IMG/VR virus record: IMGVR_UViG_3300032516_000001
Span: 62,001 to 126,000 of that record
DNA: 64,000 nucleotides
Direction: 5' to 3' (one strand)
Of this stretch, positions 16,363-46,254 are shown piece by piece. Positions within the stretch are counted from its first letter, which is position 1. The number at the start of each line of letters is the position of its first letter. The position numbers and the translations under genes were made by a program. Under the pieces are notes generated by a model that saw nothing but the letters and a program-made list of their open reading frames with translations, was not told the origin of the DNA and did not search any database.

Positions 16363-17394
16363 TCAACTTGCTCCTATATAGACTTGATGCACCGTGCATT
16401 TCCATTCAAATGAATTTTGAGTTCCTCCTTCGATACCCGCGCACGTGATCGATAAGCATTTATTTGTGTCATCAACATTTAGCACTACAGTGGCCGCAAC
16501 GAGCGCAGCGTCCGTCGAACCTCCGTCGTAGGCTATTGAACCCACAACGTAACACGTTCCACCCATTTGCTTGACGCCAGATCCAATACTCCATGTGGTG
16601 ACTTTGCCAGCGTCAGTTCCACCAAGGCAGACACCAACGAGTTCAACGGGATCATCGTCTATACTAGATCCATAGAGATAGACTTCAGGTGATGAACCAG
16701 GAGTACCAGCGGGACCAGTGTAACCAGTGACGCCATCAGGACCAATGGGACCTGTGTAACCAGTGACGCCGTCAGGTCCAACAGGCCCGGTGGCTCCTGT
16801 AACGCCATCAGCCCCCTGCGGTCCGGTGGCGCCTGTGACACCGGGCAATCCTTGTGGTCCAGTGGAACCAGTAACTCCAGCAGGCCCTGTAACGCCTGTA
16901 ATACCAGGATCTCCCTGTGGACCAGTTATCCCAGTTATCCCGGGGGAACCTTGTGGTCCAGTGGAACCAGTTATGCCTATCGGACCTGTAACGCCATCGA
17001 TCCCTGTGGCACCTTGAGGACCAGTGGCTCCTGTAATACCATATGGGCCAGTTGATCCTGTAACACCATCAATTCCTGTGGCACCTTGAGGACCAGTGGC
17101 TCCTGTAATACCATCAGCGCCCTGTGGCCCAGTGTAACCTGTGACACCATCTGAGCCAGTAGGACCGGTGGCTCCTGTGACGCCATTGGCGCCCTGTGGC
17201 CCAGTATAACCAGTTACGCCTATTGATCCTGTTGGACCAATAACTCCTGTAACACCTTCAGACCCAGTAGCACCTTGAGGACCGACAGGGCCCGTTGAAC
17301 CGCCACCTCCACCACCAGGAGGCCCTGGTTCACCGATAAGGCTACCAGGTCCTGAAACCAGTGCAGGGTTCACTTCACTAAATGGTCGTGGCAT
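16363..17394 (-). CDS. collagen-like (Gly-X-Y) fibre protein
   Basis: about 200 aa of [10 protein letters not shown] triplets plus C-terminal beta domain. Confidence 0.85.
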
Positions 17395-20794: not shown

Positions 20795-22564
20795 CTAACA
20801 TAACTTACAATCAAAACCCGAAACAGTTACATTCCGTTTTAACATGAACTTGATTTTTTCTTTACCAAATGACTTGTGATAATTATGCTTATCTGCATAT
20901 TCCTTTTCTTTCATACTCATTTTACATGCCCTGTTATACAATGTCTTCTTGTGTAATATGAACCCGTCTTCCCCGATATAATAATAATCTGGACGAACTA
21001 TTCCTATTTGATCCCAATTTGCAGCTTTGTATATGGTCCCAAAATGACCATAGGTTTTATCAGCGAATGAAACTAGACACACAATCTTACCAAAATTCGG
21101 ATCTTGGAAAATAGACCTGGAAATTCTGGATAGAAACCAAGAAGCGAAATTCTTCTTCTGATATCCAGGGTGTATGCAAAAACGATCAAGTTCCAAAACT
21201 TGTCTCGGATTTATATTCATGGAAGTGGCCACTTCCTCTCGTATTACAGACGAAAACTTACATATGGCAATGCATTGTGATTCAAGAAAAGCCCCGTATA
21301 TTATTTTTGAAGACCTCCCGAAAGCAGCATAATGATATGAGTTTAGGAAATCTACAGCATCACCAGCATTAACTGTAAAAATTCTGATGTCTGATAAATT
21401 GAATTGTTTCTGCTCAATTTCTGGTTCATGGCCGACAATGAAGTTATTGATCTTTGATGTGATGGCATGTGGATTGGAAAATTCATGTTCATACAAATAC
21501 AAAATTCTTGCAGATGGATCAAATTTCTCTAAATAAGTATACTTGGATGCATCTCTACACTGTCTATTAGGCAATGAGTGCCAATATTCCCCTTGACATT
21601 CTATGTATACATTATGATCGGGTAAGAAATAATCAAATAAATATGGCCCGATTGGAACCTGAGATTTATGTTTGATTTGCACACTATTAAGAATTAACTC
21701 AGTAATTTTCTCGATAGACGATTTTCTACCCATTTGAGCAGATCGGATCTTACCCATTTTTTCTCGAAATTTATCATCTTTCCATAATTCCTTACTTTGC
21801 AATATCTTCAATTCTCTATATTCCGGATCTTGCCATCTTCTCTTCAATCCAGAAACCACGGAATCTCTATATTCTGAATTATTCCATTTATTTTTTGCTG
21901 CTTTACAAGCTTTTATCTGAAATTCTGGATCTTGCCATTTGGTCTTAGCTATATTCGATAATTTAGTTTTATATTCTTCGGTCCGCCAAAGATCTTCGTA
22001 GTGTTTTCTATACTCTGGATCTTGCCATCTATCTTTTTGAAGCGTTTTTTGATGATCTTTATACCCTTCCCTTTGCCAAACCGATTTCTGTTGTTTAGAT
22101 TGATTATCTCGATATTCTTCATTTTGCCAAATCAGTGTTTGTTGTTTGGATTGATTATCTCGATATCCTTCTCTCTGTACAACTAACTTTTGTTTTTCTG
22201 ATTGTCCTGTTCTAAATTCTTTTGTTTTAAATTTTCTTTGATTTTCTATATATTCCGGAGTCTGCCACAAGTCTTTTTTTACTTTGATCTGATTTTCTCT
22301 AAATTTCGGATTTTCCCATAGTTCTTTAGTTCTATCAGACAATTGTTTTCTTCGTTCATCAGTATATACACGTTTCCTATTACACACACTGCATAATAAA
22401 ATACCACGTCTTTTAAGTCTCGCTTTTAAGCACAGAATTGATGTTATGATTGTGACATCACAATCATAACATCTTATTATAACATTTGATGAGTTATTCT
22501 GAGGCTGGCCAAACTGTGCTAAGGTCAAATCCCAAACAATATGTTCTTTTATATTTAATTCCAC
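20795..22564 (-). CDS. fusion protein: CxxC..CxxC + 17-aa W..PEYR repeats + Vsr/DUF559-like endonuclease + Mom-like GNAT DNA-modification domain
   Basis: SSIE...FDYFLPDHNVYIECQGEYWH...RDASK (Vsr/DUF559 pattern); FLNSYHY, VLELDRFC, NFASWFLSR, LVSFADKTYGHFGTIYKAANW (Mom-family pattern). Confidence 0.75.
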   Translation of the reverse strand: MELNIKEHIVWDLTLAQFGQPQNNSSNVIIRCYDCDVTIITSILCLKARLKRRGILLCSVCNRKRVYTDERRKQLSDRTKELWENPKFRENQIKVKKDLWQTPEYIENQRKFKTKEFRTGQSEKQKLVVQREGYRDNQSKQQTLIWQNEEYRDNQSKQQKSVWQREGYKDHQKTLQKDRWQDPEYRKHYEDLWRTEEYKTKLSNIAKTKWQDPEFQIKACKAAKNKWNNSEYRDSVVSGLKRRWQDPEYRELKILQSKELWKDDKFREKMGKIRSAQMGRKSSIEKITELILNSVQIKHKSQVPIGPYLFDYFLPDHNVYIECQGEYWHSLPNRQCRDASKYTYLEKFDPSARILYLYEHEFSNPHAITSKINNFIVGHEPEIEQKQFNLSDIRIFTVNAGDAVDFLNSYHYAAFGRSSKIIYGAFLESQCIAICKFSSVIREEVATSMNINPRQVLELDRFCIHPGYQKKNFASWFLSRISRSIFQDPNFGKIVCLVSFADKTYGHFGTIYKAANWDQIGIVRPDYYYIGEDGFILHKKTLYNRACKMSMKEKEYADKHNYHKSFGKEKIKFMLKRNVTVSGFDCKLC

Positions 22565-23249: not shown

Positions 23250-26200
23250 TCACAAAATCTTGAAAATTGATACCACAGGATTAGAGGCAGTTGGTGGTAA
23301 AAACAACAAAGGAGGCGTCCAGGGATTCACATATATTGAACCATTAAGCGTAAAATGAGTTGGATCAACAAACGTAATAACCCAACTACCGTTCGCTTCA
23401 ATTGTACCAATTACATTCATAATTATGATAGTATATCCTGTTAGAAATCCATGAGCGGAGGTTGTTTCAATTTCGACCTCTCCCCCATTATTGGCTGTAC
23501 CAATGATTTCTTTACCCATTGTACCCACAACCGTATATGCCTTGGGAGCTGTTACGAAATTGGAAGTATTGGTTAAACCTATTGATGGCGATGGCAACAA
23601 TGGTGTAGGACCCCAAGTAAATACTCTACGATTTTTGATTACTGGTGGATAATACGCTTCTGTTGGTGGTACGGGACGTGTTACAATAACCCCGCCACTC
23701 ACCCAAGGATTTATATACGCTGAACCATTAAGTGTAAAATGGGTTAACCCCCACAGACCTGGGGCGACTGTTATATCCCAATCACCATTTGCTTCGATTG
23801 TACCAAGTACATCAGTAATTGTAATATGATAACCAGTTGTAAGTTTATGTGGACTTGCTGTCTCAATTTCAATTTCTCCCCCACTATTATCCGTACCTAT
23901 GACATATAAAGTTTGATTGATATTCCAATGAATCCAATAGGTTTCATCATCAGATATTGGATGGAGATGACCAACATCCCCAGTTGCAAATTGCCAGAAT
24001 TTTATATTATCATATAGAACTCGAGATGGTGGATCTATTCTGATGAATATTGATGAACCATGAACTCCAGGCTCTACTCTATGAGCCTCATATCTGATTT
24101 TAATCTCGTTTGATAAAGTAACTAATGTAGCTGGATCCGAAGCATCTGGGGATATGATAATATTAGTTAAGTCATCGTTGGTATGAATTTTTTGAGTCTC
24201 TTTAATAATTCCAGATATGTGTTCATTGAACATCAATTTAGAAACATTAGCTAAATCAATGGCCGTGAGAAGATTGGAAGCTGGTGCTGGTAGAACAATA
24301 TTAAGTATATCATTAGCAAGATGCACTCTATACTGAATAACATGTAATAGATATTTGATCCTAAATTCATTCAAAATATCTATAGATGTTAATAGATCAA
24401 TCGCTACCGGAGAGATCATTATATTTGATGTATCGTCCTCGAGATCAGTAATATACCCACGTGTATTAATTAAATCTATGGACGAGATTATGTCCAAAGG
24501 TGTGGCAGTTTTCCTTAATCCACCACGTGATTGAAGATCCTGAGTCATCGGAACAGGGACAGTGTCCTCATATAATTCTGTATACGAAGATACTGTCTCA
24601 TCGGCCATGAAGTCATCTACCGGAGTTCCACCTGAATATACCTTAAATCCGAAATGTGGATGGACAACTTGGGTTCTCAAGTGATCTGGCGATACTACGA
24701 CATTGGCTTGATTTAAAACCTGATGAGGAATGATCATTCTTTCATTTAGTGTTATCTTTCCGATCGAATATCTAAGATATGACCATCGAGTCCTCGATAT
24801 TTCTTCAGGATCAAAGCTGCCGAATGAAATTGTAGGTTGTCCATAAACAATCGGACTTATGAAACTAGATGAGAATGGCGGCAATCTCAAAACATCATAT
24901 GATGCTGATATGACCGGGACTGCTCCACCATCTACATAAATAGATAATGAGCTGACTGGGTCTCTTACTATTCTATAAATGTGCGAAGACGTCCAGTCTA
25001 TTTGATGCAAATAGTATGAGCTTAAAAGAGTAGTGTCTCCTCCTCTGTAAATGCCGATATATCTACGACTAGCGGCAGTCAGATCATTAATCTTACTATC
25101 TCTAAATATGGCAATTGATTCCCAATCCACTACAGACTTGGCAGCTCGCATGTCAGAACTAGCAAGCTGATCACTACCAGACCCAAATGAAATGGATGCA
25201 GTTGATACACCAGAATTTAACCCAGAATACGTTGGTGCTGGGCCAAGGGCTGTCAGCGGTAATCCATCAGCATATACATAAACATTATCGATAACTTTCG
25301 AAGTGTAAATATTGAATGTATGAATTTGTCCGTCATTCCATGCAAATGCATACTGAGCCATTACATCTAATGCATCCGTAAATGAGTTATATGATGCTAA
25401 ATTCAAATATTGATCATTTGTAACTGGATCCATCATCAACTGTAATTCAGCATTTTTACCACCGGTACCTTCATTAACAAATATTAGAGCCCCCGCAAAT
25501 CTTAAAGTCAGCAGTGGACCGAGAGCCGGTATCCAATCCCCAGGAACGAATGATTTGACAGTAAGTCTTGCATCCAATTTCCAGTCAACGCTTGGACCAA
25601 ATGCTGGAGTAGTAACTAGCGTATCTGATTGGGTATACGCTAAATAATCAGATGTACTCGAATCGGTAATTCTGAGAACACGTCCCAGCATCGTAGATAA
25701 CTGAGTGCCAGAAACCGCCCACGGTTGACTATCTAGATCTGGTCTGTTAGCCCCAAACCATGAAACTTTTGGTTCCGGATTAGAATCCAACCCCAAATAA
25801 ATGCCGGGACTAAACCCTAATTTTGCAAGAGCACTTCCTTGCACAATTTCAAAACTAGCAGTGACGCCTAGATTTGCAGAAGTGAGTTTAATTTTTCCAC
25901 CATCGTCACTAGCAAATGCAAATCCGACATCCGGATGAATGTTTATTCTTGCTACAACAGCTGCAGCTGTTGTATCACCAGCCTGAAATATAATATTTAC
26001 GTCCGGACCATTATTGATTCTGATAACTAACAAGTCACCAAGAATAATTGTGAATAATTCATGGGCCGTTCCTAGGGTCGTTGCCGCTGATGGGGAATAC
26101 TGTAGGAAAGCGAACTGAATCGAAAAATCTTTATCATCTATGAATAACCCGGCAGACTTGTTGCTCAGCCCAAATGTGTAATAATCAACACTGGTCTGAA

Positions 26201-28652
26201 ATTCGATACTAGAAGCCGTGTCAACGGATAAAATGGGTTCCAAACGTGTATAACCACGATAAGCACCAGAGCTCAACCCCAATGCTGATATCTCAGCATC
26301 GGCTGCTTTGGCTGTTGAATCCAATAATAGAATATCACCCGGTAAGATTCTTTCATGTCCGCCTTGACCGATAGTCATCCAGGGAGCAGTCGGGTCTAAT
26401 TCCGGAATAACTGATGCTGCATAATCGACAAATTTATTGTCCTCAATTAAATTTGCATCTAACGGAGTCAAATTGGCGTATACAAGTTGCCATTTACTTA
26501 TCGATTTGGCATCTCTACCAATCGACCCGAAGAAAATTTGCTGTATCGGATCAAATTTACCATCTATATCAGATATGGCTGGGAGATCTATAACGTCAAC
26601 TTGCACGACTGGAAACACGCTAGCACTTAAATATAGAGACGCGTTACCACTCGGATCACGATAAATTCTATACGATTTGTATTCCGTCCAATCGGTAGCA
26701 TATGATTCCCATGCACTGTCGAATTCAGCATAATTTCTATTGGTCAAAATACCAACTTGTTTAACTTGTTCAACGCTATTTACTGTATCCTCAACAAAAT
26801 GCACCCCAGTTTGTTCACGATGTGCATTGAATTTAGTTCTAAGTTCATTCACTAAACCGATGGCTGTTGTTAAATTTGAAGCATTAGTTGACATAATGGG
26901 ATTCGTTATATCAACCAACTGATGTATTAGGCCTGCCCCACTCCCTTTTGCAATATGGGAATTGAATGTTGACTTTATACTATTCAGTAATATTACTAAT
27001 GATGTTAAATTAGTAGCATCAACGATAGGAATATAGCTACCAACATCATTTGGTTCATGCGATCCGATGTTAGTTAAATGAGCTTCGAATTTAGCTCTTA
27101 TATCATTAGCCATAACTATAGATGACGAGAGATTTGTAGCATCGGTTATGATGAATCCTACAATAATTACTTTTCTGCCATCAGAAATACCAAGAGATAC
27201 GCCAGTTGCCACTCCATCTGGAGTATATTCGCCAATTTTGACTCTAAAAGCAGCCGATATGACACTAGATGTCTCAATTTCAATATCATGAGTAAAGAAT
27301 GGGGGCATACTGTCCGCCCCCGTTTGAATATTCGAGTCAGTTATCATTAGCTCTGTCCCGCCGGAGGCAAGAGACAACACCCCATCACCTTCCAAAATCC
27401 ACGGATCGACTGCATTTTGAGGGAGCGTTGCTGGAATGTATCTAATGATAACTTCCGATATTTTTTGTGATAGAACTGGGAATGTCAATTTATTGATCGG
27501 AACATTTAACAATAAAGTAGTAGGATCATTCAGAGCGGCTGTATATGCGCGCTCATATCCCTTATATTTCCATCCGATTTTCCTAGGTTGGAAAGCAGAA
27601 ATTAAATCTGGAGTATGCCCTGGATTTATTAAATAAGATCTACAACGATATTTATGCTGTGGATAACCACAATAGTTCTTGTTGCCGTCTTGATTGAGAC
27701 AAAACTCTGGGGTGTTCAATCTCAAAAATCGAGCAGGAGGATTACTTATCCAGTCATAATCAACTGTTACAATATCTCCAGAATTTGGTTTAACGGACAA
27801 TACTATGGCTCCGAGCAAGCCAAATACAACATCAACAGCAACTGGATTTCCATTGACATAAGCTCGAACATCTGTTGGGTCATCTGCCACGGTGCCAAGA
27901 CGTGGATTTTGTAATGTCCAAGTTAATGGACCAGTAAGTAGACTCGGATAAGTGTCTGTCACTATTATTATTCTGGGAAGCGTGATGCGATTGATCATAT
28001 CGTCGTCAACATGAAAGTATCTATTCTTTCTATGGGTTTCGTATTTGCTCAAAATTTCATTCGCCAGAACCACAGCATCTTTTAATTGAGTGGCATCGTG
28101 TGCAGTAATAACTTTTCCTGTCAATGGATCAACGTCATCTTCGAATTTATGAACTGGTGGCGTTCCAGATATCATTATTGCATGTGCATTGAACTGAACT
28201 TTGATATCATTTAATAAATCAATAGAAGTGAGTAAATCGATAGCAATTGGCTTAGTTGTTATATTAGTCGTATCATCTGTACCATGAACGCCAGATTCTA
28301 TTCTGTGTTTGTTATAGTTATCTCTAAGAGTGTTTGCCATTGCCACAACCTTAGTAGTTGTAGCAGCAGGATCTGACGTATCTAAATTAGCATTGCGAAG
28401 AGTTAAACGGGTTGGACTACTAATATCAACAGTAAATGTTCCATCATTTCTGGCACCATCACTACCAGAAATTACTAGAAAGTATTCATTATATGCTGAA
28501 GTAAAACTGCCAGTTGGGACCTCAACTTCAGTCTCGGATATGACCTTAAGATTGGCTCCGGTAAGTATATCTAACGGTCTTTTTACAATGGGACCTTTGT
28601 TAGTGAATACGGTGCGGTCCCAAACGGAAGATAGACCAGTAAAAGCAACCAC
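23250..28652 (-). CDS. 1800-aa virion structural protein with three clusters of His-pair helical repeats and two C-terminal FCCH-like beta domains
   Basis: 9 copies of LxNxxxxx[FY]xxHx6-12HxxxD; duplicated ETxxxHxxxTGxxIxIxxVxGTIEANGxW domain. Confidence 0.75.
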   Translation of the reverse strand: MVAFTGLSSVWDRTVFTNKGPIVKRPLDILTGANLKVISETEVEVPTGSFTSAYNEYFLVISGSDGARNDGTFTVDISSPTRLTLRNANLDTSDPAATTTKVVAMANTLRDNYNKHRIESGVHGTDDTTNITTKPIAIDLLTSIDLLNDIKVQFNAHAIMISGTPPVHKFEDDVDPLTGKVITAHDATQLKDAVVLANEILSKYETHRKNRYFHVDDDMINRITLPRIIIVTDTYPSLLTGPLTWTLQNPRLGTVADDPTDVRAYVNGNPVAVDVVFGLLGAIVLSVKPNSGDIVTVDYDWISNPPARFLRLNTPEFCLNQDGNKNYCGYPQHKYRCRSYLINPGHTPDLISAFQPRKIGWKYKGYERAYTAALNDPTTLLLNVPINKLTFPVLSQKISEVIIRYIPATLPQNAVDPWILEGDGVLSLASGGTELMITDSNIQTGADSMPPFFTHDIEIETSSVISAAFRVKIGEYTPDGVATGVSLGISDGRKVIIVGFIITDATNLSSSIVMANDIRAKFEAHLTNIGSHEPNDVGSYIPIVDATNLTSLVILLNSIKSTFNSHIAKGSGAGLIHQLVDITNPIMSTNASNLTTAIGLVNELRTKFNAHREQTGVHFVEDTVNSVEQVKQVGILTNRNYAEFDSAWESYATDWTEYKSYRIYRDPSGNASLYLSASVFPVVQVDVIDLPAISDIDGKFDPIQQIFFGSIGRDAKSISKWQLVYANLTPLDANLIEDNKFVDYAASVIPELDPTAPWMTIGQGGHERILPGDILLLDSTAKAADAEISALGLSSGAYRGYTRLEPILSVDTASSIEFQTSVDYYTFGLSNKSAGLFIDDKDFSIQFAFLQYSPSAATTLGTAHELFTIILGDLLVIRINNGPDVNIIFQAGDTTAAAVVARINIHPDVGFAFASDDGGKIKLTSANLGVTASFEIVQGSALAKLGFSPGIYLGLDSNPEPKVSWFGANRPDLDSQPWAVSGTQLSTMLGRVLRITDSSTSDYLAYTQSDTLVTTPAFGPSVDWKLDARLTVKSFVPGDWIPALGPLLTLRFAGALIFVNEGTGGKNAELQLMMDPVTNDQYLNLASYNSFTDALDVMAQYAFAWNDGQIHTFNIYTSKVIDNVYVYADGLPLTALGPAPTYSGLNSGVSTASISFGSGSDQLASSDMRAAKSVVDWESIAIFRDSKINDLTAASRRYIGIYRGGDTTLLSSYYLHQIDWTSSHIYRIVRDPVSSLSIYVDGGAVPVISASYDVLRLPPFSSSFISPIVYGQPTISFGSFDPEEISRTRWSYLRYSIGKITLNERMIIPHQVLNQANVVVSPDHLRTQVVHPHFGFKVYSGGTPVDDFMADETVSSYTELYEDTVPVPMTQDLQSRGGLRKTATPLDIISSIDLINTRGYITDLEDDTSNIMISPVAIDLLTSIDILNEFRIKYLLHVIQYRVHLANDILNIVLPAPASNLLTAIDLANVSKLMFNEHISGIIKETQKIHTNDDLTNIIISPDASDPATLVTLSNEIKIRYEAHRVEPGVHGSSIFIRIDPPSRVLYDNIKFWQFATGDVGHLHPISDDETYWIHWNINQTLYVIGTDNSGGEIEIETASPHKLTTGYHITITDVLGTIEANGDWDITVAPGLWGLTHFTLNGSAYINPWVSGGVIVTRPVPPTEAYYPPVIKNRRVFTWGPTPLLPSPSIGLTNTSNFVTAPKAYTVVGTMGKEIIGTANNGGEVEIETTSAHGFLTGYTIIIMNVIGTIEANGSWVITFVDPTHFTLNGSIYVNPWTPPLLFLPPTASNPVVSIFKIL

Positions 28653-28672
28653 GTTCTGCGCTCCCTATTACC

Positions 28673-31222
28673 TCAATAGATTGGGTTGCCTGCTTCATCA
28701 GTCAAATTTATTGCTACGACTGTGTATGAAACAGGTCCCATGTTAATTACTCGTACTGAGGCTCTATCACCACCTATCCAGTCTGCTTCCTTCTGAAGAA
28801 TACCACCTCCTGAAATGGTTAGGTTTGATAAAGATAACGGGAGTTTGCACATTTCTTTAGAGAAAAATACCTCCACAGCATCAGATCCAAACCTCATTCC
28901 ATCCACATTCCCAATAAGCCCTATTCTTGGTATTGCTGATGCTACAGATGGTCTTATAGCCAACCCGATAAATGATGATGTGAAATTAAATCCATGAAAA
29001 AAATCCGTACCAGCATATCCATAATTGGAAAATGGTGGAGGATCACCAAATAAATTATCGTGATATGTATCTTGAAGAGTACCAGAAATTGTATATATCT
29101 CCCCATTTATCATTGAATCGACATCAACAACTATTGTATCATTAATAGGGGCAGAAATCACCCTAAATCCGCGGACTCCATGCGGACCAATCCTAGCTAT
29201 ATGATCCGAACAAACTCGCCTCATATCAGATACTAAATTAGACAAAGATCCAATGTCGGTGGCATCAACCGCTTGCACGATATCGGAATCTGCACATTGC
29301 CAATGCTCAGATGAATTGAGCATATGTCTATTTAGCTTAAATTTGAAACTATTTGCTGCAATAATAATGCTGGGTAAATCAGTATGATGAGCATATTCAC
29401 CGGAAGATGCGAAATCCGAACCGTCTACATATCTATGCATAAGTGGAGGCCACGATAGGTGAAAATCATATGCTTTCACGATATTATTCAAGGCCCACAT
29501 CGATACTGGCAGTGAAGTAATGATATGAGATCTAGTTGCAATAGGTTCATCATCCACTTCAGCTTGGATAGATCCTGGAAGAACGATTTCACGATCAAAT
29601 AAAATAGATGCTGATATTTCAGGTTCAACCAAAATAGATTGTACTCGAGCCGTTCCAATACCTCGCGAACGTGCAGTAATACTACCAGTGTAATTAGCAG
29701 GAGATGTTATACTGAATCCATCTTCACTTGTTACAGTGGCCTCAAGTCGTACTGAAGGGATGTTGGATCGCATTATGAAACGTAAATCGGCGAATAACGT
29801 ATAAGGTCCACGAGTTTCAAATGCCATGTTCGGTGCACCATAACTCGCAAAAACTGCTATTTGATTTATCGGTGAGCCATATGCTGAGCTAAATGAAAGC
29901 GGATATTCGGTCAATAATACATGATTATTATATGCTAATTTTAGACCTATGTTCGGTGGATTTGGTGTATAGCCAGCGAACACACCGCAAGCAATTACTA
30001 AAATAGGATCCGTATAAGATCCGAAGACATCTCTAAAAGTCATGGTATTAATGCTATCATCATATAGATGAACCCCGGCCTGATGCAAGTGATTTATATA
30101 TTTTCTCTGTACTTCATTTACTAGATTGTAAGCAGTGGTGGCATTAGTTGCATCGGCCATCGTGATACGATTAACAGTATCCATATTGGCATGAACAAGA
30201 TCTGAAGAAATGTGCGCATTAAAATCAGCTTTGAATTCATTTACTATAGTTATTAACACTGATAAAATTGACCAACTAAAAATCGGAGAAGTTACTTCAT
30301 TAGCAGTGTCCGCTACAATATGCACCCCGCTTTGATATGCCGCCCAGTTAATTTGAGTATCAGCGTCTAATACTGGTCCATTGAAATAAACTCGTACCAC
30401 TCCCGTGTTGAAATAATCATTACTAACATCTGATACATAAGCATCAATGATTTCAAGTTGAGTCAAACTAGTATAGCTATATGGTAAAGGCGCTCGCGAT
30501 GCCAACGTTAAAGGAACAGTTCCAGTTGCAGTATTTAAAGACCAATCAGTGACTCCAATAAAATCGATAACAAATGAATTAGCCGCCGGCATGCCTCCTG
30601 GTAATTGCACACGAAAAGTCGTTTCAGGTATGCCTTCAGCAGCCCATGGTAATAAAGCCATGGCCACCCCAGGGCCGGGAATACTGGCATCTCGGATGGT
30701 GAATGTTGCCGGTACTATTGCTGATTCGGTCGTTGGACCCACAGACCGATCAAATAAGATGTCAACACATCCGCGTTCTGATTGCCAGGCACCAATAACC
30801 ATTGGCGGGTCTATCACATTAGCATCAAAATTTTTAGCTCCCGATATGATCTCTTCTCCTAAAATACTAAGCACGCCGGCCGTGCCCAAAGAATATGATG
30901 TTCCTGTAGTTAATGGTTGAGCTAAATTCAATACTACGGACCAATGATCAGCATCGTAAAAATCAACTGAATTAATAGTCGGTATTATGGCTATAGGTGG
31001 AGCTGGTGGTACTGTAGGAACAGTCAATGTTAAGATATAATTTACAGGATTGAGAGCTGTATCTGTCAATTCATCATTGTAATAAACACGAACTCTTTTG
31101 GAAGATATTTGATGAACATTAAAATCAAATGTTCCTGGACCAGATGATAAAAATACCGCTCCAGGTACGATTCTGCCAAATCTAGAGCTTGGTAGCCCCA
31201 ATCTCCCGGTTAAAGCAACCAT
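28673..31222 (-). CDS. virion structural protein with Ig-like domains and His-pair repeats
   Basis: VRVYY/VDILFDR/VRVYFN/VEVFFS Ig-like strands; two clusters of the same His repeat as 23250..28652. Confidence 0.7.
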   Translation of the reverse strand: MVALTGRLGLPSSRFGRIVPGAVFLSSGPGTFDFNVHQISSKRVRVYYNDELTDTALNPVNYILTLTVPTVPPAPPIAIIPTINSVDFYDADHWSVVLNLAQPLTTGTSYSLGTAGVLSILGEEIISGAKNFDANVIDPPMVIGAWQSERGCVDILFDRSVGPTTESAIVPATFTIRDASIPGPGVAMALLPWAAEGIPETTFRVQLPGGMPAANSFVIDFIGVTDWSLNTATGTVPLTLASRAPLPYSYTSLTQLEIIDAYVSDVSNDYFNTGVVRVYFNGPVLDADTQINWAAYQSGVHIVADTANEVTSPIFSWSILSVLITIVNEFKADFNAHISSDLVHANMDTVNRITMADATNATTAYNLVNEVQRKYINHLHQAGVHLYDDSINTMTFRDVFGSYTDPILVIACGVFAGYTPNPPNIGLKLAYNNHVLLTEYPLSFSSAYGSPINQIAVFASYGAPNMAFETRGPYTLFADLRFIMRSNIPSVRLEATVTSEDGFSITSPANYTGSITARSRGIGTARVQSILVEPEISASILFDREIVLPGSIQAEVDDEPIATRSHIITSLPVSMWALNNIVKAYDFHLSWPPLMHRYVDGSDFASSGEYAHHTDLPSIIIAANSFKFKLNRHMLNSSEHWQCADSDIVQAVDATDIGSLSNLVSDMRRVCSDHIARIGPHGVRGFRVISAPINDTIVVDVDSMINGEIYTISGTLQDTYHDNLFGDPPPFSNYGYAGTDFFHGFNFTSSFIGLAIRPSVASAIPRIGLIGNVDGMRFGSDAVEVFFSKEMCKLPLSLSNLTISGGGILQKEADWIGGDRASVRVINMGPVSYTVVAINLTDEAGNPIY

Positions 31223-34200
31223 TAGTCGTGGTAAATCTCCAGACGGGCCATATAAACCACTACCGCATCTGAGCCGGTGGGACCAGTGGCTGAACTACCA
31301 AGACTGACCTGAACCTCATAATCTTGTTCCCCAGCGAAAGTCAAATCCGGTGACTTTATATACGTAGGAACACTACTAGTTGTAGCTAGTATCGAATTAC
31401 TAACAAATGTTCCAACCCCGACATCATAGAGCCGAGCGGATCCAGTCAATCCCGACGAAGACCCGAAGTATGCGGCGAATTGAAGATGTTGATTACCTCC
31501 AGTTGGGACCGTCGGTCTATAGTCTGCAGGATCAAATCGAAGAGCACCAACAGTTATATATCCGGTAGCAGAAGAAGACTGCGGGCCGGCAACCCCTATG
31601 ACATAGTGCTTTCTAGCAATTGTTTGTATTATATATCCGGTAAATCCGCCACTAGGACCTGTATACCCAGGAAGTATAATCCCCTTCAGTCCATCAATAG
31701 CTCCCTGTACATTAGTAAAACCAAACGCGGGAAGTGTATCGACAGCTGAAATCAGATCAGCAGAATCGCCCCCAGATGGACCAGTCGCCCCAGTTACTCC
31801 ATCGATTCCTGTTGCGCCTTGGACCCCCGTAGCGCCTTGTGGTCCTGTCGCACCAGTTGCTCCGTCAGGACCAGTGGCTCCAGTTACCCCGCCAATCCCA
31901 GTAGCGCCTTGTGGCCCTGTAGCACCCGTCTCACCTTGTGGTCCTGTTGGTCCAGTAGCTCCTGTTACGCCATCAACGCCTGTCGCGCCTTGTGGACCTG
32001 TCGAGCCCTGCGGACCCGTCGCTCCAGTTACTCCTCGTGGTCCAACCAATTCGGAAGATATCGCTGATTGAAGAATCGAAGGGGAATCGCTAACGATATC
32101 CCCGGACTCCATATTTGTCATGCCGCCGTTATAACCTGACGGACCACTATCCTTTATAGTTGGATATGTATCGCCATCGCCCATTCTCCACCAGGCGACC
32201 AAATTTGGCGGAGCATCGGCTCTATTTACTGCTTTGCCAGTAGCAAGCCACGTTACTTCCGTGCTAGTCAGTACTCTATTATAAACAGTTATTTCGTCAA
32301 GATTGCCTGGGAATGGTGCATAACCCATGCCTGGCACTGCTCCTGCAATCGTAGCACTGGCTGTATTTAATATACTTTGAGTTAGATTACTTTGAATAGT
32401 AAGTATCCCAGTTATAGATCCGTCTATGTAGAATTTAACACCACTAGCGAGTGAAGTCCCCGCGTAGGTGACAACACAATGATGCCAAGTTCCACTGTTT
32501 AAAACTGACACATTATCAGTTACGTATAATTGGCTATTATCGGCCCCGTTCAAAAAAAGAAAAAAGCATCCACTTCGATTACCAACCGCATAACCCGGAT
32601 AGTAAGTGGGCCCATTCTGCATCTTTGCAAAAAATCCATAAGAGTAATTGGTGGTTTTAACCCATAGAGATATAGAGAACGAATCCGTGCGCTCAAAATT
32701 GAGCACATTACCTAGAACCACATATTCATCAGTACCGCCAAAGAGAATGGATTTTTCAGAATTTCCCGCAACGCCCTTCGCACCTGTAGGACCAGTTACG
32801 CCAGTGGATCCTGCCGGTCCTGTGGCACCTCGCGGTCCAGTTGGACCAGTCGCTCCAGTAACACCCTGGGAACCGGTAACGCCTTGCGGGCCTGTTGGTC
32901 CAGTGGCTCCAGTTACTCCGTTGATTCCTGTAGCACCTTGCGGGCCTGTTGGTCCAGTCGCTCCGGTTATTCCATCAATACCCGTAACGCCTTGTGGTCC
33001 AGTGGCTCCTGTCTCCCCCGCGGGTCCTGTTGGTCCAGTGACGCCGGTAACTCCGTCAACACCTGTGGCGCCTTGTGGTCCTGTCGGCCCCGTGGCCCCG
33101 GTAACTCCATCAACGCCTGTTACGCCTTGCGGCCCCGTCGCACCTTGCGGGCCTGTGACACCTGTGACACCGCCGATTCCAGTAGCACCTTGTGGTCCTG
33201 TTACACCTTGTAAACCCGTTGCGCCTTGTGATCCTGTTGGTCCTGTAGCCCCGGTTATTCCATCAATACCCGTAACGCCTTGTGGTCCAGTGGCTCCAGT
33301 TACTCCTGGAGATCCTTGTGGGCCGGTAGACCCAGTTACTCCGTCAACCCCGTTAATTCCTGTCGGTCCAGCAGGACCCGTAGCCCCAGCAGGACCCGTA
33401 GCCCCAGCAGGACCCGTTGGACCAGCAGGACCCGTTGGACCAGCAGAACCCGTTGGACCAGCAGAACCCGTTACTCCGTCAACCCCGTTAATTCCTGTAG
33501 CGCCTTGTGACCCTGTGGCTCCTATCCCCCCCGTGGGTCCTGTTGGTCCAGTAACGCCGGTAATGCCATCAATTCCTGTAGCACCCTGTGGTCCAGTGGC
33601 TCCGGTTGCTCCATTAGGACCTGTTGGACCAATAGCTCCTGTGGCACCACCAGGTCCGGTCGCCCCGGTTACTCCGTCAATTCCTGTGGCCCCCTGTGGA
33701 CCCGTAGGACCTGTAGCACCAGTTGCTCCATCAGGACCCGTAGGACCTGTGATTCCTGGAGATCCCTGAGGACCAGTAACACCAGTTGCTCCATCAGAAC
33801 CAGCGGCTCCAGTGACTCCTGGAGATCCCTGTGGGCCAGTAGCCCCCTCTGGGCCAGTAGTTCCTGTGACCCCGGGTGATCCTTGCGGTCCTGTAGCTCC
33901 AGTAATTCCATCAGAACCTGTAGCACCTGTAACACCATTAGACCCCGTCGCGCCTTGTGGTCCTGTCGCTCCAGTGACTCCTGGTAAGCCTTGTGGTCCT
34001 GTCGCTCCAGTAACACCGTCCGGCCCTGTTGGTCCACCATAAGGACCCGTTGCGCCCTGCGGACCAGTAGCTCCGATTACTCCCGGCTCTCCTTGCGGAC
34101 CAGTAGCTCCGATTGGACCTGTTGGACCAGGTGAACCCTGTGGACCCTGAGGACCAGTTGGTCCACCATAGGGTCCCGTAGCACCGACGGGACCTGTTTC

Positions 34201-36132
34201 TCCTTGCGGGCCGGTCGGACCTGTTGCCCCATCTGGACCTGTAACTCCAGTGACTCCAGGACTACCCTGTGGGCCAGTAGCTCCAGTGACGCCAGTAACT
34301 CCATCGATTCCAGTTGCTCCGATAGGGCCTGTTGCTCCTACTGGTCCAGTTGCACCTGTAACTCCATCAACACCAGTGGCTCCGATAGGACCGGTAGATC
34401 CAGTTACGCCATCGATACCGGTAGCGCCCTGTGGGCCAGTCGATCCCGTGACTCCATCGATACCGGTCGCGCCAATTGGCCCTGTCGGTCCAGTCGCACC
34501 TGTGACGCCATCGATCCCTTGAACACCAGTGGCGCCTATTGGGCCAGTCGCTCCTGTAACGCCATCAATTCCTGTGGCACCTTGTGGTCCTGTCGATCCT
34601 GTAACTCCATCTATACCAGTCGCGCCAATCGGCCCGGTTGGACCAGTAGCTCCTGTAACTCCATCGATTCCTTGAACCCCGGTCTCGCCTTGAGGACCGG
34701 TCCAACCCGTCTCACCAGCTGGTCCCGTTGGTCCAGTAGCGCCTGTAACACCGTCTATACCAGTTGCTCCTTGAACACCAGCCCCTGTAGCACCTGCCGG
34801 TCCCGTCGCTCCGGTAACACCAGCTATTCCTGTAGCACCTTCAGCACCGGCAGGTCCTGTGGGTCCCATTGGGCCTTCCGGACCAGTAGGACCTATTGGC
34901 CCGGTAACTCCATCAGGACCTGCCGCTCCTTGTGGTCCTGTAACGCCTGTAACGCCAGTATAGCCTGCTGGTCCTGTCGGTCCGGGCGCGCCTGTAACAC
35001 CGTCCGCGCCTGTTGCGCCTTGGATCCCATCGGGTCCGGTTGCTCCTGTAACTCCGTCGTTACCTGGTAACCCTTGGACGCCGGTTTCACCTTGTATACC
35101 TGTGACACCATCTGGTCCCGTTGCACCTGTAATGCCTGGTGATCCTTGGGGACCAGTTGCTCCTGTTACACCAGGACCCCCCTGCGGACCTGTTGAACCA
35201 GTAACACCTTGTGGTCCTGTAGCGCCGGTTCCCCCTTTCGGTCCCGTTGATCCGAAAATTCCTTGTGAACCTGTGGCCCCACGCGGCCCGGTTGATCCTG
35301 TGACACCGGTTGCACCTTGGGGGCCTGTAACTCCTATACCCGTAGCCCCTTGCGGGCCAGTTCCACCTTGTGGGCCAGCAGGACCAGTAACCCCCTGCGG
35401 TCCCGTAGAACCAGTAACCCCCTGCGGTCCTGGAGGACCACCAAATGGTCCAGTAGCTCCTGTAATCCCATCTGGTCCAATTGCGCCAGTTACACCAGGT
35501 GATCCCTGTGGACCGGCAGTACCAGTTGCGCCATCAGGGCCGGTGGCTCCTGTGACTCCAGGCGATCCCTGCGGTCCTGTAGCTCCGATAGTTCCATCAG
35601 GTCCCGTTGCGCCTGTAACACCTGGGGATCCTTGAACACCTTGGGGCCCCGTAGAACCAGTAACCCCCTGCGGTCCTGGAGGACCACCAAACGGTCCAGT
35701 AGCGCCTTGTGGTCCGGTGGGACCAGTAGTCCCTGTGACACCAATAGGGCCCGTTGATCCTGTAACTCCAGGAGATCCTTGTGGTCCGGTGGCTCCAGTA
35801 ATACCGGGACTACCTTGCGGTCCCACCGGACCAGTATGGCTTGAAATATCAAATGCAAATTGTGATAAACCGCCGGCAGTCAATACGTGGGTTACAATTG
35901 ATCCGAATGTATGAGCTGCGGCAAGTGTACCCTCTATATGTCTAACAATATCAAATACATTGCCGGCTACCCCGGTAACGAGCATTAACTCATTATCTAT
36001 TTTAATACGGAATTGAGGTAACGGAGGAAATAATGCAGCACTGGCAACTGTAACACTAAGAGCAACTGGACTTATACCGCCCAGTTGATCTATGGTCGTC
36101 TGTGCTGTGTTTGCGAAACGTTCGGTAGGCAT
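31222..36132 (-). CDS. giant collagen-like fibre protein with internal LamG/concanavalin A-like domain
   Basis: about 1000 aa Gly-X-Y; then FSISLWVK...WHHCVVTY...FYIDG...[12 protein letters not shown]...LVAWWRM (LamG); second collagen block; C-terminal beta domain. Confidence 0.88.
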
Positions 36133-41677: not shown

Positions 41678-42424
41678 TATTCGGCCCCTTGATTTGAACC
41701 AGGGCCCCCTCTTTGGGCCCCGGCTTCTGCTAACTCTTCAGCAGCTGCTAATGTTCTATCAGCCACATTTCCGATATTCAATCCAAAGAGATCTTGCTGA
41801 TTTTTCACAGTATTAGCTGTATAAGGTGTGTTAGCTTGGATTTCGATCTTCCTAATTAACGTGTCTACTGATGTAGATTCGGTTAGTAATTTATCAATGA
41901 GAACGACTTCTTGTTGTAATTGATCGGAATAATCTAACGCTCTTTTAATCTTGAATTCTAATTTTTCTCGTTTGGATTTTATAATCTCAAGTTGCCATGC
42001 TTTCATTCTTTCAACTCTTAACCCTAAATCTCTGTCATATCTTTGACCACCTCTCCATCGCCTGCTATCAGTATAGGTTTCAGAGTATCCACCAGAAACT
42101 AAACCGTCTTGTCTGACAGTAATAGGTTCTCCTCTAGTCAAAAATACTGGAACATCACGAGTCCTCAATAACATTTCTTTTTCCGGATATCCACCTAATA
42201 TTCTATATGCGGAGAGTAATTTGGCTCCGTAACTATTCAAAGGCGATACCGAAAAAGATTTCGGATAATTATTATCATCGTATTCAGTAGTAAACACACC
42301 GGCTCTTAGTAACTCCTTTTGAAGCCATTTCTTCCGTAATTGCAAATCAAGTTTTTGAATCTTAGAAAAAGCCTTAAATGCCTCCCATTGACCTTGAGTG
42401 AAATGTGCCGAAGAAATTATACAT
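41677..42424 (-). CDS. hypothetical baseplate-region protein; true start probably ATG 42424 with a +1 frame break at 42403-42400
   Basis: Perfect SD AAGGAGGT 8 nt before ATG 42424; that frame stops after 16 codons while the +1 frame is open to 41677; coiled-coil C-terminal half. Confidence 0.6.
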
Positions 42425-43388
42425 GTTCTTCTACCTCCTTCCTCTTATGAATGCATATTCCATTACCGATATATTTACTAAAATTGCAATTCCAACACAA
42501 AATTTGATAAAGATTTCTATCCAATGTCTCGTCAAGCAGCCGACGATAAAAATACGACGTTCCACATTTATTCATGTGTCTGACCAAAGACCCATCGTTA
42601 TTAACATGATCTATATTTAATTTAAAAATTTCAGTTTGACCACAACAAGCGCAATGATCTCCTAATAAAGTAATGACCTTAGATCTCAAAATCATATTAT
42701 TTTGTTTTTGACAATATGGACAACCACTACGTTTTCTTGTTCCATATTTCAAATGATATGAAGTCCTTGTTAATTTCGGTCTACCACATGTTTTACACGA
42801 ATCACCATTGAAAGGATGAATAGAAATCGGGTCTTTAAAAAATAATAATTTATTTGCCTTCTCACCATTGCAGTTTCTACATAAAATTTGATAGTTAGTA
42901 ATATCCTGTATACCGCTCGCGATCTTAGAATACAAGCACTTATGATGCATTGTTTTACGTTCAATCGCGCCATCATTATTTATATGATCTATAGTTAAAA
43001 ATTCTATTTCTTTCCCCCCACATTTTACACAAACTCCGCCAAGAAGTTCTATTGTCCGTAATTTATTTCGATAATGCCTGTCTCTGTCTTTCTTATTTAA
43101 TTCTGTTTTATTTACGATTCTATATTTTGCACCATAATTGATCACATACTCTCTATTTTCATGTTTTTTTCTCCAATTCTTAAGATTCAGTAATATCTTA
43201 TCTCTATTGTTTGCTTTATATTTAGGTAACCACTTAATATTATATTTATTCATGTAAGCACGAGTACATTTTCTACATACTGAATTGAATCCGCTTTTCC
43301 TATTGCTTCTCCGACAGAATTCAGAGATACTCTTGATTTCTTTACATTTCGTGCACGTTTTCAGCTGATCAGTTATCTGATCAATCAT
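42417..43388 (-). CDS. HNH homing endonuclease with two tandem nuclease domains
   Basis: CTKC..CRKC N-terminus; CxxCG..LTIDHINNDG..YQILCRNCN and CACCG..LNIDHVNNDG..YQILCWNCN. Confidence 0.85.
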   Translation of the reverse strand: MIDQITDQLKTCTKCKEIKSISEFCRRSNRKSGFNSVCRKCTRAYMNKYNIKWLPKYKANNRDKILLNLKNWRKKHENREYVINYGAKYRIVNKTELNKKDRDRHYRNKLRTIELLGGVCVKCGGKEIEFLTIDHINNDGAIERKTMHHKCLYSKIASGIQDITNYQILCRNCNGEKANKLLFFKDPISIHPFNGDSCKTCGRPKLTRTSYHLKYGTRKRSGCPYCQKQNNMILRSKVITLLGDHCACCGQTEIFKLNIDHVNNDGSLVRHMNKCGTSYFYRRLLDETLDRNLYQILCWNCNFSKYIGNGICIHKRKEVEEHV

Positions 43389-45655: not shown

Positions 45656-46254
45656 TATTGTATCCTCTTATGACGACAAATCCCGCCACCATAATGTTTA
45701 CTTATATTGCAATTCCAACACAATAATTGATAATCAGAAGTATTTTCGGCATCCCTAACTATACGATAAACGGCCATACCACTTTTCCCTAAAGACCGTA
45801 ATTGACGTCGATGAACTCCGCCATTTTCATGAATGTGATCAACAGTCAAAAATTCTTGTTCCGATTCGCCGCAACAATTGCACCTTCCACCCAATTTCAT
45901 AATGACAGATGACTTTAGTTTATGCCTATATGCTTTACAGGCGTCTAACATCTTTATCTTTTCATCAACGTCGGAATATTTTTCAATAAAATAACCGTGC
46001 ATATATTCTTTTATGGAATTATAATTTTTCCTATAATATTCTTTCCTATTCTTCAATATCTCATTTTTATTGTTTGTATACCATTCATGTTTATACTCTG
46101 TTATCAATTCCTTATTTTGAGCCACATATTTATTATGTGAACTTCGGGCTTTGTTCGTGTTATTGACGTAATATTTTCTACTTCTTTCTTTAATTTTCTT
46201 TTTATTTACTTCATAATATTTTTTCATATATTCTTTTCTATGTTCTTTATCCAT
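45655..46254 (-). CDS. HNH homing endonuclease
   Basis: K/Y-rich helical N-terminus; CNCCGE..FLTVDHIHENG..YQLLCWNCN. Confidence 0.85.
   Translation of the reverse strand: MDKEHRKEYMKKYYEVNKKKIKERSRKYYVNNTNKARSSHNKYVAQNKELITEYKHEWYTNNKNEILKNRKEYYRKNYNSIKEYMHGYFIEKYSDVDEKIKMLDACKAYRHKLKSSVIMKLGGRCNCCGESEQEFLTVDHIHENGGVHRRQLRSLGKSGMAVYRIVRDAENTSDYQLLCWNCNISKHYGGGICRHKRIQ

What the first reader, a model, noticed from the sequence alone, without database searches (positions are those of the whole stretch)
24058..30335. His-pair helical repeat always present in triplets: probable pseudo-threefold metal-binding module
Seen: an approx. 40-aa unit A[TS][ND]LxxxxxLxNxx[KR]xx[FY]xxH-x6-12-H-xxx-D-xx-N. 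It occurs nine times in the 1800-aa protein as three clusters of exactly three (about 27980-28370, 26775-27145, 24058-24440), and about six times in the adjacent 849-aa protein as two clusters (about 29915-30335, 29176-29520). Established: trimeric fibres such as T4 gp37 bind iron octahedrally with six His from three chains. Inference: here three in-chain repeats supply six His in a three-helix bundle, a monomeric metal site inserted repeatedly into virion proteins. Possible roles are structural clamp, metal sensing or metal-receptor mimicry. I do not recognise this repeat family.
Basis: partly seen in the sequence, partly recalled or inferred. Interest (0 to 1): 0.7.

Follow-up and report, generated by a model that had tools for sequence, protein, structure and literature searches.

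The report
Six-histidine three-helix module in phage fibres
Two giant tail-region proteins of an uncultured huge phage carry five copies of an unnamed domain, in which three helix-loop repeats from one chain form a closed three-helix bundle with six conserved histidines; it is common in uncultured phages, has no known structural relative, and may bind a metal, which is untested.

Summary
A 41-50-aa helix-loop unit (A-T/S-D/N-L..L.N..K..[YF]N.H-x6-11-H-xxx-D-xx-N) occurs nine times in the 1800-aa protein, as 3+3+3, and in two modules of three in the 849-aa protein. A sixth module lies in a 1570-aa protein outside the window.

- **Fold:** AlphaFold2 on 101 aligned triplets gives a confident model (pLDDT 95): three 19-residue helices joined by long return loops, with the N and C ends paired.
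- **No known relative:** nothing in Pfam, NCBIfam, PDB or BFVD matches. PHROG "head fiber" hits are only weak.
- **Family size:** at least 1,149 clusters at 50% identity, almost all from uncultured phages.
- **New result:** 82 of 101 modules keep all six His. Of the 19 that lack the last one, 18 carry the loop motif ahead of helix 1 instead (p = 2e-12). The unit is therefore a closed ring of three helices and three loops.
- **Host proteins:** they look like monomeric strings of Ig-like domains. Small stand-alone versions sit next to major capsid genes.

Metal binding is plausible but untested, because no coordinates or metal model could be obtained. "Always triplets" fails family-wide: arrays of 4-13 units and helix-only units exist.

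The parts
23250..28652 (-). Protein A, 1800 aa (GTG start). It carries three six-His modules and ends in two tandem small beta-barrel (E1_FCCH-like) domains.
27972..28373 (-). A module 1, aa 94-227: three helix-loop units. His pairs are 116/123, 157/168 and 207/214.
26760..27149 (-). A module 2, aa 502-631. His pairs are 525/532, 566/577 and 611/618. This is the module that was modelled (aa 498-640).
24021..24413 (-). A module 3, aa 1414-1544. His pairs are 1437/1444, 1478/1490 and 1524/1531. It runs into a conserved strand, GVHGSSIFIRIDPPSRVLY.
24414..24500 (-). Truncated half-unit upstream of A module 3, aa 1385-1413. It keeps the start of the helix and the D..N loop end but has lost both His.
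28673..31222 (-). Protein B, 849 aa. It is modelled as Ig-like beta domains (aa 34-298, 477-568, 696-849) with two helical modules between them.
29912..30349 (-). B module 1, aa 292-437, circularly permuted. It has a leading loop (H301, D305, N308), units with His 337/344 and 378/385, and a third helix ending in H434. That helix is broken by a 14-aa insertion and modelled with low confidence.
29141..29527 (-). B module 2, aa 566-694: three full units. His pairs are 588/596, 633/640 and 674/681, all invariant in 12 B homologues. Model helices are 571-590, 616-635 and 657-676.

Best explanation
The repeat is a previously unnamed protein domain family.

**The unit.** Each unit is a 19-residue amphipathic helix whose last turn ends in an invariant His. 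A 20-26-residue return loop follows. The loop carries a second invariant His (usually G-V-H), an Asp four residues later and an Asn seven residues later.

**The module.** Three units from one chain close into a single-chain, pseudo-threefold three-helix bundle. The helices run the same way and each loop runs back along the bundle. The module therefore starts and ends at the same pole and plugs in between neighbouring beta domains.

**The host proteins.** The module sits in large, probably monomeric, bead-on-a-string virion surface proteins. Here these are two giant proteins in the tail-fibre/baseplate gene block of a huge phage. In small phages they are short proteins encoded right after the major capsid gene.

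**Most likely job (inferred).** The module is a compact, very stable clamp or knob. Its six His and their partner Asp/Asn hold the loops onto the helices, quite possibly by chelating a divalent metal.

**Shown and inferred.** The repeat, its conservation, the three-helix prediction, the closed ring and the family size are shown. The parallel topology, the virion location, the monomeric state and above all the metal are inferred.
For: **The repeat is real**
- Both His are invariant in the 14 window units.
- The jackknife HMM test rules out circularity.
- A sixth module lies in a third protein of the same genome.

**The fold**
- AF2 on 101 triplets gives pLDDT 95.2 and pTM 0.89, with helices 11-29, 52-70 and 97-115.
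- The connecting loops are non-regular but confidently modelled.
- The only two strands are residues 3-6 and 133-136, so they must pair with each other.
- B module 2 also comes out as three helices in an independent full-length model.

**Conservation over 101 modules with 27% mean column identity**
- H1: 101/101 in all three units.
- H2: 101, 101 and 82 of 101 in units 1, 2 and 3.
- Mid-helix Asn: 100, 94 and 90.
- Asp at H2+4: 94, 93 and 73.

**Closed ring of six His**
- 18 of the 19 modules that lack the last H2 have the loop motif with a His before helix 1. Only 9 of the 82 complete modules do (Fisher p = 2e-12).
- B module 1 is of this permuted kind, and its six His are conserved in B homologues.

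**Near-equivalent units.** Units at the three positions are almost equally similar to each other (0.35-0.39 identity), as expected for equivalent environments.

**Family size.** 1,149 clusters at 50% identity reach E<=1e-3, and 629 reach E<=1e-10. Arrays of three are the commonest (135), and arrays of six are also common (20).

**Host proteins and context**
- B's beta domains match S-layer Ig-like domains (SbsC, Z 14.9, rmsd 1.8 A).
- Neighbouring genes are a collagen-like tail fibre with a LamG domain, a Baseplate_J-like protein, an SLT/baseplate-hub-like protein, and a weak match to a baseplate-wedge tail-fibre-network component.
- Stand-alone triplet proteins lie directly after capsid genes in three unrelated contigs.

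**Metal reading (indirect)**
- Six invariant His in a threefold arrangement with a conserved Asp partner is what His6-metal sites of trimeric phage fibres and spikes look like. T4 gp37 binds seven Fe through HxH pairs, as summarised in PMC11705849.
- H1 lies on the buried face of the helix (helical-wheel reading).
Against: - No coordinates were available, so it is not shown that the His side chains face each other, or whether they form one site or three separate groove sites.
- The Zn complex job was not folded.
- An Arg usually follows H1, which puts a positive charge near the supposed cation site.
- Relatives contain 24-aa helix-only units that keep the Asn and H1 but have no loop and no H2. 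H1 therefore has a role that does not need H2.
- The parallel topology rests on loop lengths, the pairing of the termini, and weak structural matches (gp41-5 single-chain bundle Z 6.5, BARA domain Z 5.5). These Z values are below the level the tool calls meaningful for helical folds.
- Virion location is inferred from synteny only.
- The AF2 alignment was selected with an HMM that already had invariant His, which inflates the apparent invariance somewhat.
Confidence: 0.6

Rival explanations
1. The fold is the same but there is no metal. The His, Asp and Asn form a buried hydrogen-bond and helix-capping network that zips each return loop onto the helices. The module is then a purely proteinaceous stability or spacer domain.
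For: - The conserved Asp (H2+4) and the mid-helix Asn are natural hydrogen-bond partners.
- Helix-only short units keep H1 and the Asn without any H2.
- An Arg next to H1 disfavours a cation.
- AF2 reaches pLDDT 95 without any ligand.
Against: - Six invariant His are unusual for a mere packing role. His is rarely irreplaceable in hydrogen-bond networks.
- The complement of exactly six is preserved through circular permutation.
- Phage fibres and spikes repeatedly use His6-metal sites (PMC11705849, plus established knowledge of T4 gp37, gp12 and P2 gpV).
Confidence: 0.3
2. The module is a functional surface element rather than a clamp. It could be a receptor- or glycan-binding knob, a metal-dependent adhesin in the sense of the "Trojan horse" idea, or a pH switch that uses His protonation.
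For: - It sits in tail-fibre-region proteins and in head-fibre-like proteins, that is, in exposed positions.
- His titrates near neutral pH.
- The module projects from the chain because its two ends are adjacent.
Against: - The most conserved residues are the buried or structural ones, while surface positions vary freely. That is the pattern of a scaffold, not of a conserved binding site.
- The module is repeated up to three times per protein, and up to 25 units occur in relatives. That fits a building block better than a specific receptor site.
Confidence: 0.08
3. The bundles are not intramolecular. The proteins are trimers, like classical fibres, and equivalent helices of three chains pair up. 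The in-chain triplet model would then be an AlphaFold artefact.
For: - Most phage fibres are trimers.
- Weak PHROG hits are to short profiles of 67 and 76 positions that could represent single-unit proteins.
Against: - Units come in threes per cluster far more often than chance.
- Circular permutation keeps three helices plus three loops within one chain.
- The monomer model is very confident.
- B's other domains are Ig-like beads typical of monomeric strings.
- No convincing single-unit protein was found: there were two short hits, one on a 523-nt contig.
Confidence: 0.05

Closest known systems
HxH iron-binding repeats of trimeric phage fibres and spikes (T4 gp37 needle; also T4 gp12 Zn and the P2 gpV / phi92 gp138 spike tips, the latter from my own knowledge)
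   Same: Both have six His arranged about a threefold axis in an exposed virion protein. The motif recurs several times along the protein. A clamp role is presumed (PMC11705849 for gp37).
   Different: - The known sites use His-x-His on beta strands of three separate chains. Here the motif is His-x6-11-His, spread over a helix end and a loop, with all six His from one chain.
- There is no sequence similarity (no Pfam fibre family hit).
- Metal binding is not shown here.
PHROG phrog_6994 and phrog_20838 ("head fiber protein"), and phrog_37030 (unknown function)
   Same: - 24 of 101 family triplets hit phrog_6994 (best E 2.9e-7) and 17 hit phrog_37030. The match covers one helix plus H1.
- Stand-alone triplet proteins lie next to capsid genes.
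   Different: - The profiles are short (67 and 76 positions) and cover about one unit.
- The window's own units match only at E 0.009-0.18, and the same search also rings in 5 of 14 unrelated control genomes.
- Neither profile describes the three-unit module or the His pair.
Single-chain pseudo-threefold helical domains: gp41-5 (3o3x), a designed single-chain version of a trimeric core with return segments, and the BARA domain of Vps30/Beclin 1 (3vp7, 4ddp)
   Same: The topology idea is shared: three equivalent repeats in one chain arranged round a pseudo-threefold axis, with central parallel helices and return segments in the grooves.
   Different: - The matches are weak (Z 6.5, 5.5 and 5.0), below the tool's chance level for helical folds, with 3-10% identity.
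- These domains have no His cluster and no relation to phage virions.
Ig-like bead-on-a-string virion and surface proteins (T4 Hoc; S-layer SbsC/Sap domains)
   Same: B's N-terminal domains match SbsC/Sap Ig-like domains (Z 14.9 and 10.9). The overall architecture is a monomeric string of small domains, as in Hoc (PMC10385173).
   Different: Those proteins contain no helical six-His modules between the beads.

Membership tests
T4 gp37-type HxH metal-binding fibre repeat | His-x-His motif on a beta strand | tested here: not met
   The motif here is H-x6-H, or H-x10-11-H in the middle units. H1 ends an alpha helix.
T4 gp37-type HxH metal-binding fibre repeat | Six His contributed by three chains of a homotrimer | tested here: not met
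   All six His lie in one chain, and the monomer model has pLDDT 95. The oligomeric state itself was not measured.
T4 gp37-type HxH metal-binding fibre repeat | Octahedral Fe or Zn bound by the six His | not testable with these tools
   The structure tool returns no coordinates, and the Zn complex job was not folded.
T4 gp37-type HxH metal-binding fibre repeat | Sequence match to known fibre-repeat families (Pfam) | tested here: not met
   No Pfam hit covers the repeat in A, B or 10 stand-alone relatives at E<=0.1.
phrog_6994 head fiber protein | Significant match to the family profile | tested here: inconclusive
   24 of 101 family triplets match at E<=0.01 (best 2.9e-7). The window's own genome matches only at E 0.009-0.18, and 5 of 14 control genomes also ring. 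A and B have no PHROG hit at E<=0.01.
phrog_6994 head fiber protein | Encoded in the head module and forms capsid fibres | tested here: inconclusive
   Small relatives lie after capsid genes. The window proteins lie in the tail-fibre/baseplate block. No virion data exist.
Any curated domain family (Pfam-A, NCBIfam) or solved structure | Profile or sequence match over the repeat | tested here: not met
   - Pfam: none.
- NCBIfam: none.
- PDB by sequence: none below E 0.38.
- PDB and BFVD by Foldseek: no match with E below 1.
- AFDB clusters and ESM Atlas: only uncharacterised relatives.
Parallel trimeric coiled coil with a polar or metal core layer | Heptad a/d periodicity with His at a core position | tested here: inconclusive
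   Hydrophobic positions run 4, 7, 11, 14, 17, 21, 24, a 3-4-3-3-4-3 spacing with one irregular step. H1 (position 24) continues this series and lies on the buried face. Without coordinates, a core position cannot be told from a groove position.
BARA / single-chain pseudo-threefold bundles | Structural superposition well above chance | tested here: not met
   Z values are 5.0-6.6, below the tool's stated chance level for helical folds.

The most novel reading that the evidence does not exclude
Each module is a new fold that binds one divalent metal octahedrally through six His of a single chain. It would be a monomeric, circularly permutable mimic of the trimeric His6-metal clamp of phage fibres and spikes. 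Huge phages would then carry dozens to hundreds of such metal sites per virion on tail and head appendages, and a family of more than 1,000 sequence clusters would become a new class of viral metalloprotein domain.
Probability: 0.35. Interest if true: 0.75.

Novelty: new variant of a known kind. Interest (0 to 1): 0.62.

Why it matters
- **An unannotated family gets a definition.** At least 1,149 clusters at 50% identity, nearly all from uncultured phages, have no Pfam, NCBIfam or structural annotation. This work supplies a domain definition, a confident fold prediction and a testable function.
- **A closed ring shown from sequence.** The permuted and unpermuted forms are a clean natural experiment. 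They show that three helices plus three loops, with six His, make up the functional unit. Closed pseudo-symmetric domains are rarely demonstrated from sequence alone.
- **If the His cluster binds metal,** the known phage trick of stapling trimeric fibres with His6-Fe/Zn would also exist in a single-chain helical form. That bears on virion stability, on the debated role of phages as trace-metal carriers, and on protein design, as a small, stable, plug-in metal-binding bundle.
- **It helps annotation.** Giant "hypothetical" proteins of huge phages could be recognised as surface appendage proteins.

Tried and rejected
- **Zn modelling:** Complex prediction on the triplet with Zn was counted but not folded, so it gives no evidence either way.
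- **Coordinates:** none are returned by the structure tool, so His-His distances could not be measured.
- **Word-indexed searches:** the triplet profile found only 2 proteins. The unit profile found 2 short proteins, one on a 523-nt contig. The idea of single-unit homotrimeric ancestors therefore stays untested.
- **tblastn against 50,697 phage records:**
  - Three stand-alone triplet proteins were used as queries. Two of them hit one metagenomic phage, MW202476.1, and one found nothing.
  - Protein A hit other parts of six records, not the repeat family as such.
- **Mutual-information covariation** across 99 triplets was noisy. The top pair, K17 with D2 of the next unit, cannot be interpreted, so it was not used.
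- **Position-specific divergence** of units 1, 2 and 3 is marginal. It says nothing on whether the triplet is ancient or repeatedly re-formed.
- **Three literature searches** found no description of this repeat.
- **Rejected readings:**
  - Chance or low-complexity repeat.
  - Membership in the HxH fibre repeats.
  - A meaningful structural relationship to lyase helical cores, the Hook domain, IglD or TssK, whose Z values of 5-6 are below the chance level.


Full report
**Setting.** The window is G000:C1:62001-126000 of a 241.6-kb linear IMG/VR viral record that CheckV rates 57% complete, so it is a huge phage. Almost all large genes lie on the minus strand. The finding covers two adjacent genes:
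- protein A, 23250-28652, 1800 aa, GTG start;
- protein B, 28673-31222, 849 aa.

The neighbouring genes point to a myovirus-type baseplate and fibre block:
- Directly upstream lies a 1636-aa collagen-like protein with a LamG domain, matching many tail-fibre PHROGs.
- Further upstream are a Baseplate_J-like protein (E 2.5e-4, 20.9 bits against a 21.1-bit cut-off, so just below threshold) and an SLT/baseplate-hub-like protein.
- Downstream is a 220-aa protein with a weak match to a baseplate-wedge tail-fibre-network component.

Fourteen units align with both His invariant and the mid-helix Asn nearly so.

| Protein | Cluster (aa) | Content |
|---|---|---|
| A | 94-227 | three units |
| A | 502-631 | three units |
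| A | 1414-1544 | three units, preceded by a 29-aa half-unit (1385-1413) that has lost both His |
| B | 566-694 | three full units |
| B | 292-437 | permuted cluster, described below |

In each A triplet the middle unit has a longer His-His spacer (x10-11) than the outer two (x6).

An HMM built from A's first triplet alone recovers all other A units, two B units, and three units in a third protein outside the window (1570 aa, G000:C1:142222-146931). No other ORF piece of the genome scores below E 0.1. His is 3-8 times denser inside the modules than outside.

**The family.** An exhaustive profile search of 1.84 billion representatives found 1,149 clusters at E<=1e-3, 629 at E<=1e-10 and 97 at E<=1e-30.
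- In the best 150 proteins, arrays of three units are by far the commonest (135 arrays), and arrays of six are also common (20).
- Arrays of 4, 5, 7-13 also occur. So do 24-aa helix-only units that keep the Asn and first His but lack the loop.
- "Always triplets" is therefore true of this genome, with six modules of three, but not of the family.
- The listing is ranked by score, so proteins with one or two units would not have been shown.

No Pfam, NCBIfam or PDB sequence match covers the repeat. Among PHROGs only short profiles respond weakly: phrog_6994 "head fiber protein" for 24 of 101 triplets (best 2.9e-7), and phrog_37030 for 17 of 101. The window's own units reach only E 0.009-0.18 against phrog_6994. 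The same search rings in 5 of 14 unrelated control genomes, so I do not file the window proteins under it. Among 50,697 deposited phage genomes, only one metagenomic phage carries a stand-alone relative. Three literature searches found no description.

**The fold.** AlphaFold2 on A aa 498-640, with an alignment of 101 triplets, gave pLDDT 95.2 and pTM 0.89.
- It has three 19-residue helices (11-29, 52-70, 97-115).
- The helices are joined by 22-26-residue non-regular connectors that are nevertheless confidently modelled.
- The only two strands are residues 3-6 and 133-136, and they can only pair with each other.

I infer that each helix runs up and each connector runs back down. The helices would then be parallel, the three units equivalent, and the module's two ends adjacent, which makes it a plug-in domain. 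This is an inference, because the tool gives no coordinates.

It is consistent with three further points:
- The three unit positions are nearly equally similar to one another.
- The best, though weak, structural matches are single-chain pseudo-threefold bundles: gp41-5 at Z 6.5 and the BARA domain at Z 5.5.
- B module 2 forms three helices in an independent full-length model.

Foldseek found nothing in the PDB or BFVD. AFDB clusters and the ESM Atlas returned only uncharacterised relatives, at TM 0.70-0.78. By these searches the fold has no solved relative. The tools themselves warn that a missing match does not prove a new fold.

**Six His as the conserved unit.** Conservation over the 101 triplets:

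| Residue | Unit 1 | Unit 2 | Unit 3 |
|---|---|---|---|
| H1 | 101 | 101 | 101 |
| H2 | 101 | 101 | 82 |
| Asp at H2+4 | 94 | 93 | 73 |
| Mid-helix Asn | 100 | 94 | 90 |

The 19 modules without the last H2 are the informative ones. Eighteen of them carry a canonical loop motif (x-V-H-x-x-x-D-T-x-N) with a His 28-42 residues before the first helix's His. Only 9 of the 82 complete modules do, and mostly in a non-canonical context (Fisher p = 2e-12).

The module therefore exists in two circular permutations, (helix-loop)x3 and (loop-helix)x3. Both have three helices, three loops and six His. This is what a closed ring predicts, in which the loop before helix 1 can take the place of the loop after helix 3.

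B module 1 in the window is of the permuted kind:
- leading loop H301/D305/N308;
- helices ending in H337, H378 and H434;
- loops with H344 and H385.

Five of these His are invariant and one nearly invariant in 12 B homologues. In the window's B, a 14-aa insertion interrupts the third helix, and that stretch is modelled with low confidence.

**The host proteins.** The full-length B model (pLDDT 78) is a string of beta domains with the two helical modules between them. The N-terminal domains match S-layer Ig-like domains (SbsC Z 14.9, rmsd 1.8 A; Sap Z 10.9). The whole model aligns to strings of Ig/FN3 domains. This is the architecture of monomeric bead-on-a-string surface proteins such as Hoc (PMC10385173), not of trimeric beta-helical fibres.

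A-like giants of about 2,000 aa in related phages keep the same plan, with triplets near aa 100 and 500 and variable arrays from about aa 1400. B-like proteins vary in unit number at the first cluster.

Small stand-alone proteins with one module lie directly after the putative major capsid gene in three unrelated contigs: L013, L015 and MW202476.1. That is where decoration and head-fibre genes usually sit. I conclude that the module is a building block of exposed virion appendages. This rests on synteny and domain content only.

**Mechanism.** The most conserved residues are the structural ones. Surface positions vary. This points to a scaffold or clamp rather than a conserved binding site. 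On a helical wheel the first His continues the hydrophobic series (positions 4, 7, 11, 14, 17, 21, 24), so it lies on the buried face at the last turn of the helix.
- **For a metal.** Six invariant His about a pseudo-threefold axis, each loop His followed by a conserved Asp, is the signature of the His6-metal clamps of trimeric phage fibres (T4 gp37: seven Fe held by HxH pairs, as summarised in PMC11705849).
- **Against, or neutral.** An Arg usually follows H1. Helix-only units keep H1 without H2. I could neither measure geometry nor model a metal.

I put the metal reading at roughly even odds against a metal-free His/Asp/Asn hydrogen-bond zipper. Whether there would be one axial site or three groove sites is open.

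**Verdict.**
The in-chain three-helix module and the six-His unit are supported. Metal binding is untested. "Always triplets" fails family-wide.
- It works somewhat like the His6 clamps of trimeric fibres but is not a member of that family. The motif, the secondary structure and the chain number were tested and differ.
- It is a large, unannotated domain family with no solved relative. I rate it a new variant of a known kind.

Noticed in passing
window 31222-36132 (-): A 1636-aa collagen-like protein with a LamG domain has at least ten collagen-repeat stretches. Its G+C is 54-59%, against 38-40% around it, presumably because of Gly-Pro codons. It matches many tail-fibre PHROGs. A second, 343-aa Gly-X-Y protein lies at 16363-17394.
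   Followed up: partly
window 1256-4369 (-): A 1037-aa SNF2-type helicase appears to be interrupted by an intein: it has Hint and LAGLIDADG homing-endonuclease matches at aa 84-354.
   Followed up: no
window 20795-22564 (-): A 589-aa protein joins an HNH/homing-endonuclease-like N-terminal part to a Mom-like DNA-modification domain (aa 393-562). It sits between structural genes.
   Followed up: no
window 23250-23900 (-), protein A aa ~1588-1797: Two tandem small beta-barrel domains resemble E1_FCCH (weak Pfam hit, E 4.8e-4). They are about 30% identical to proteins annotated "phage stabilization protein" in Manatee Spring phages, and 48% identical over 64 aa to a protein of a Bradyrhizobium phage.
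   Followed up: no
G000:C1:142222-146931 (-), outside the window: A third giant protein (1570-aa open frame) of the same phage carries one more six-His module at aa 856-992.
   Followed up: partly
relatives P0014 aa 380-480, P0028 aa 100-210, P0004 aa 360-400: These stretches contain 24-aa helix-only versions of the unit (..L.NE.KADYNAH..), with no return loop and no second His, mixed into arrays with full units. Their structure is unexplained. They show that the first His and the Asn matter even without the loop.
   Followed up: partly
L015 9001-9756 (protein P0139): This stand-alone module protein has an N-terminal domain matching Pfam K1-lyase_C above the gathering cut-off (31.7 bits against 27, aa 32-112), ahead of the six-His module. 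It lies right after a putative SU10-like capsid gene.
   Followed up: no
window 28640-28652 and 31205-31222 (-), N-termini of A and B: A and B start with similar peptides (VVAFTG... and MVALTG...). This may be a shared attachment or assembly motif.
   Followed up: no
window 42417-43388 (-) and 45655-46254 (-): Two Lys/Cys-rich ORFs (323 and 199 aa) lie between large structural genes. By eye they look like mobile endonuclease-type genes. They were not searched.
   Followed up: no
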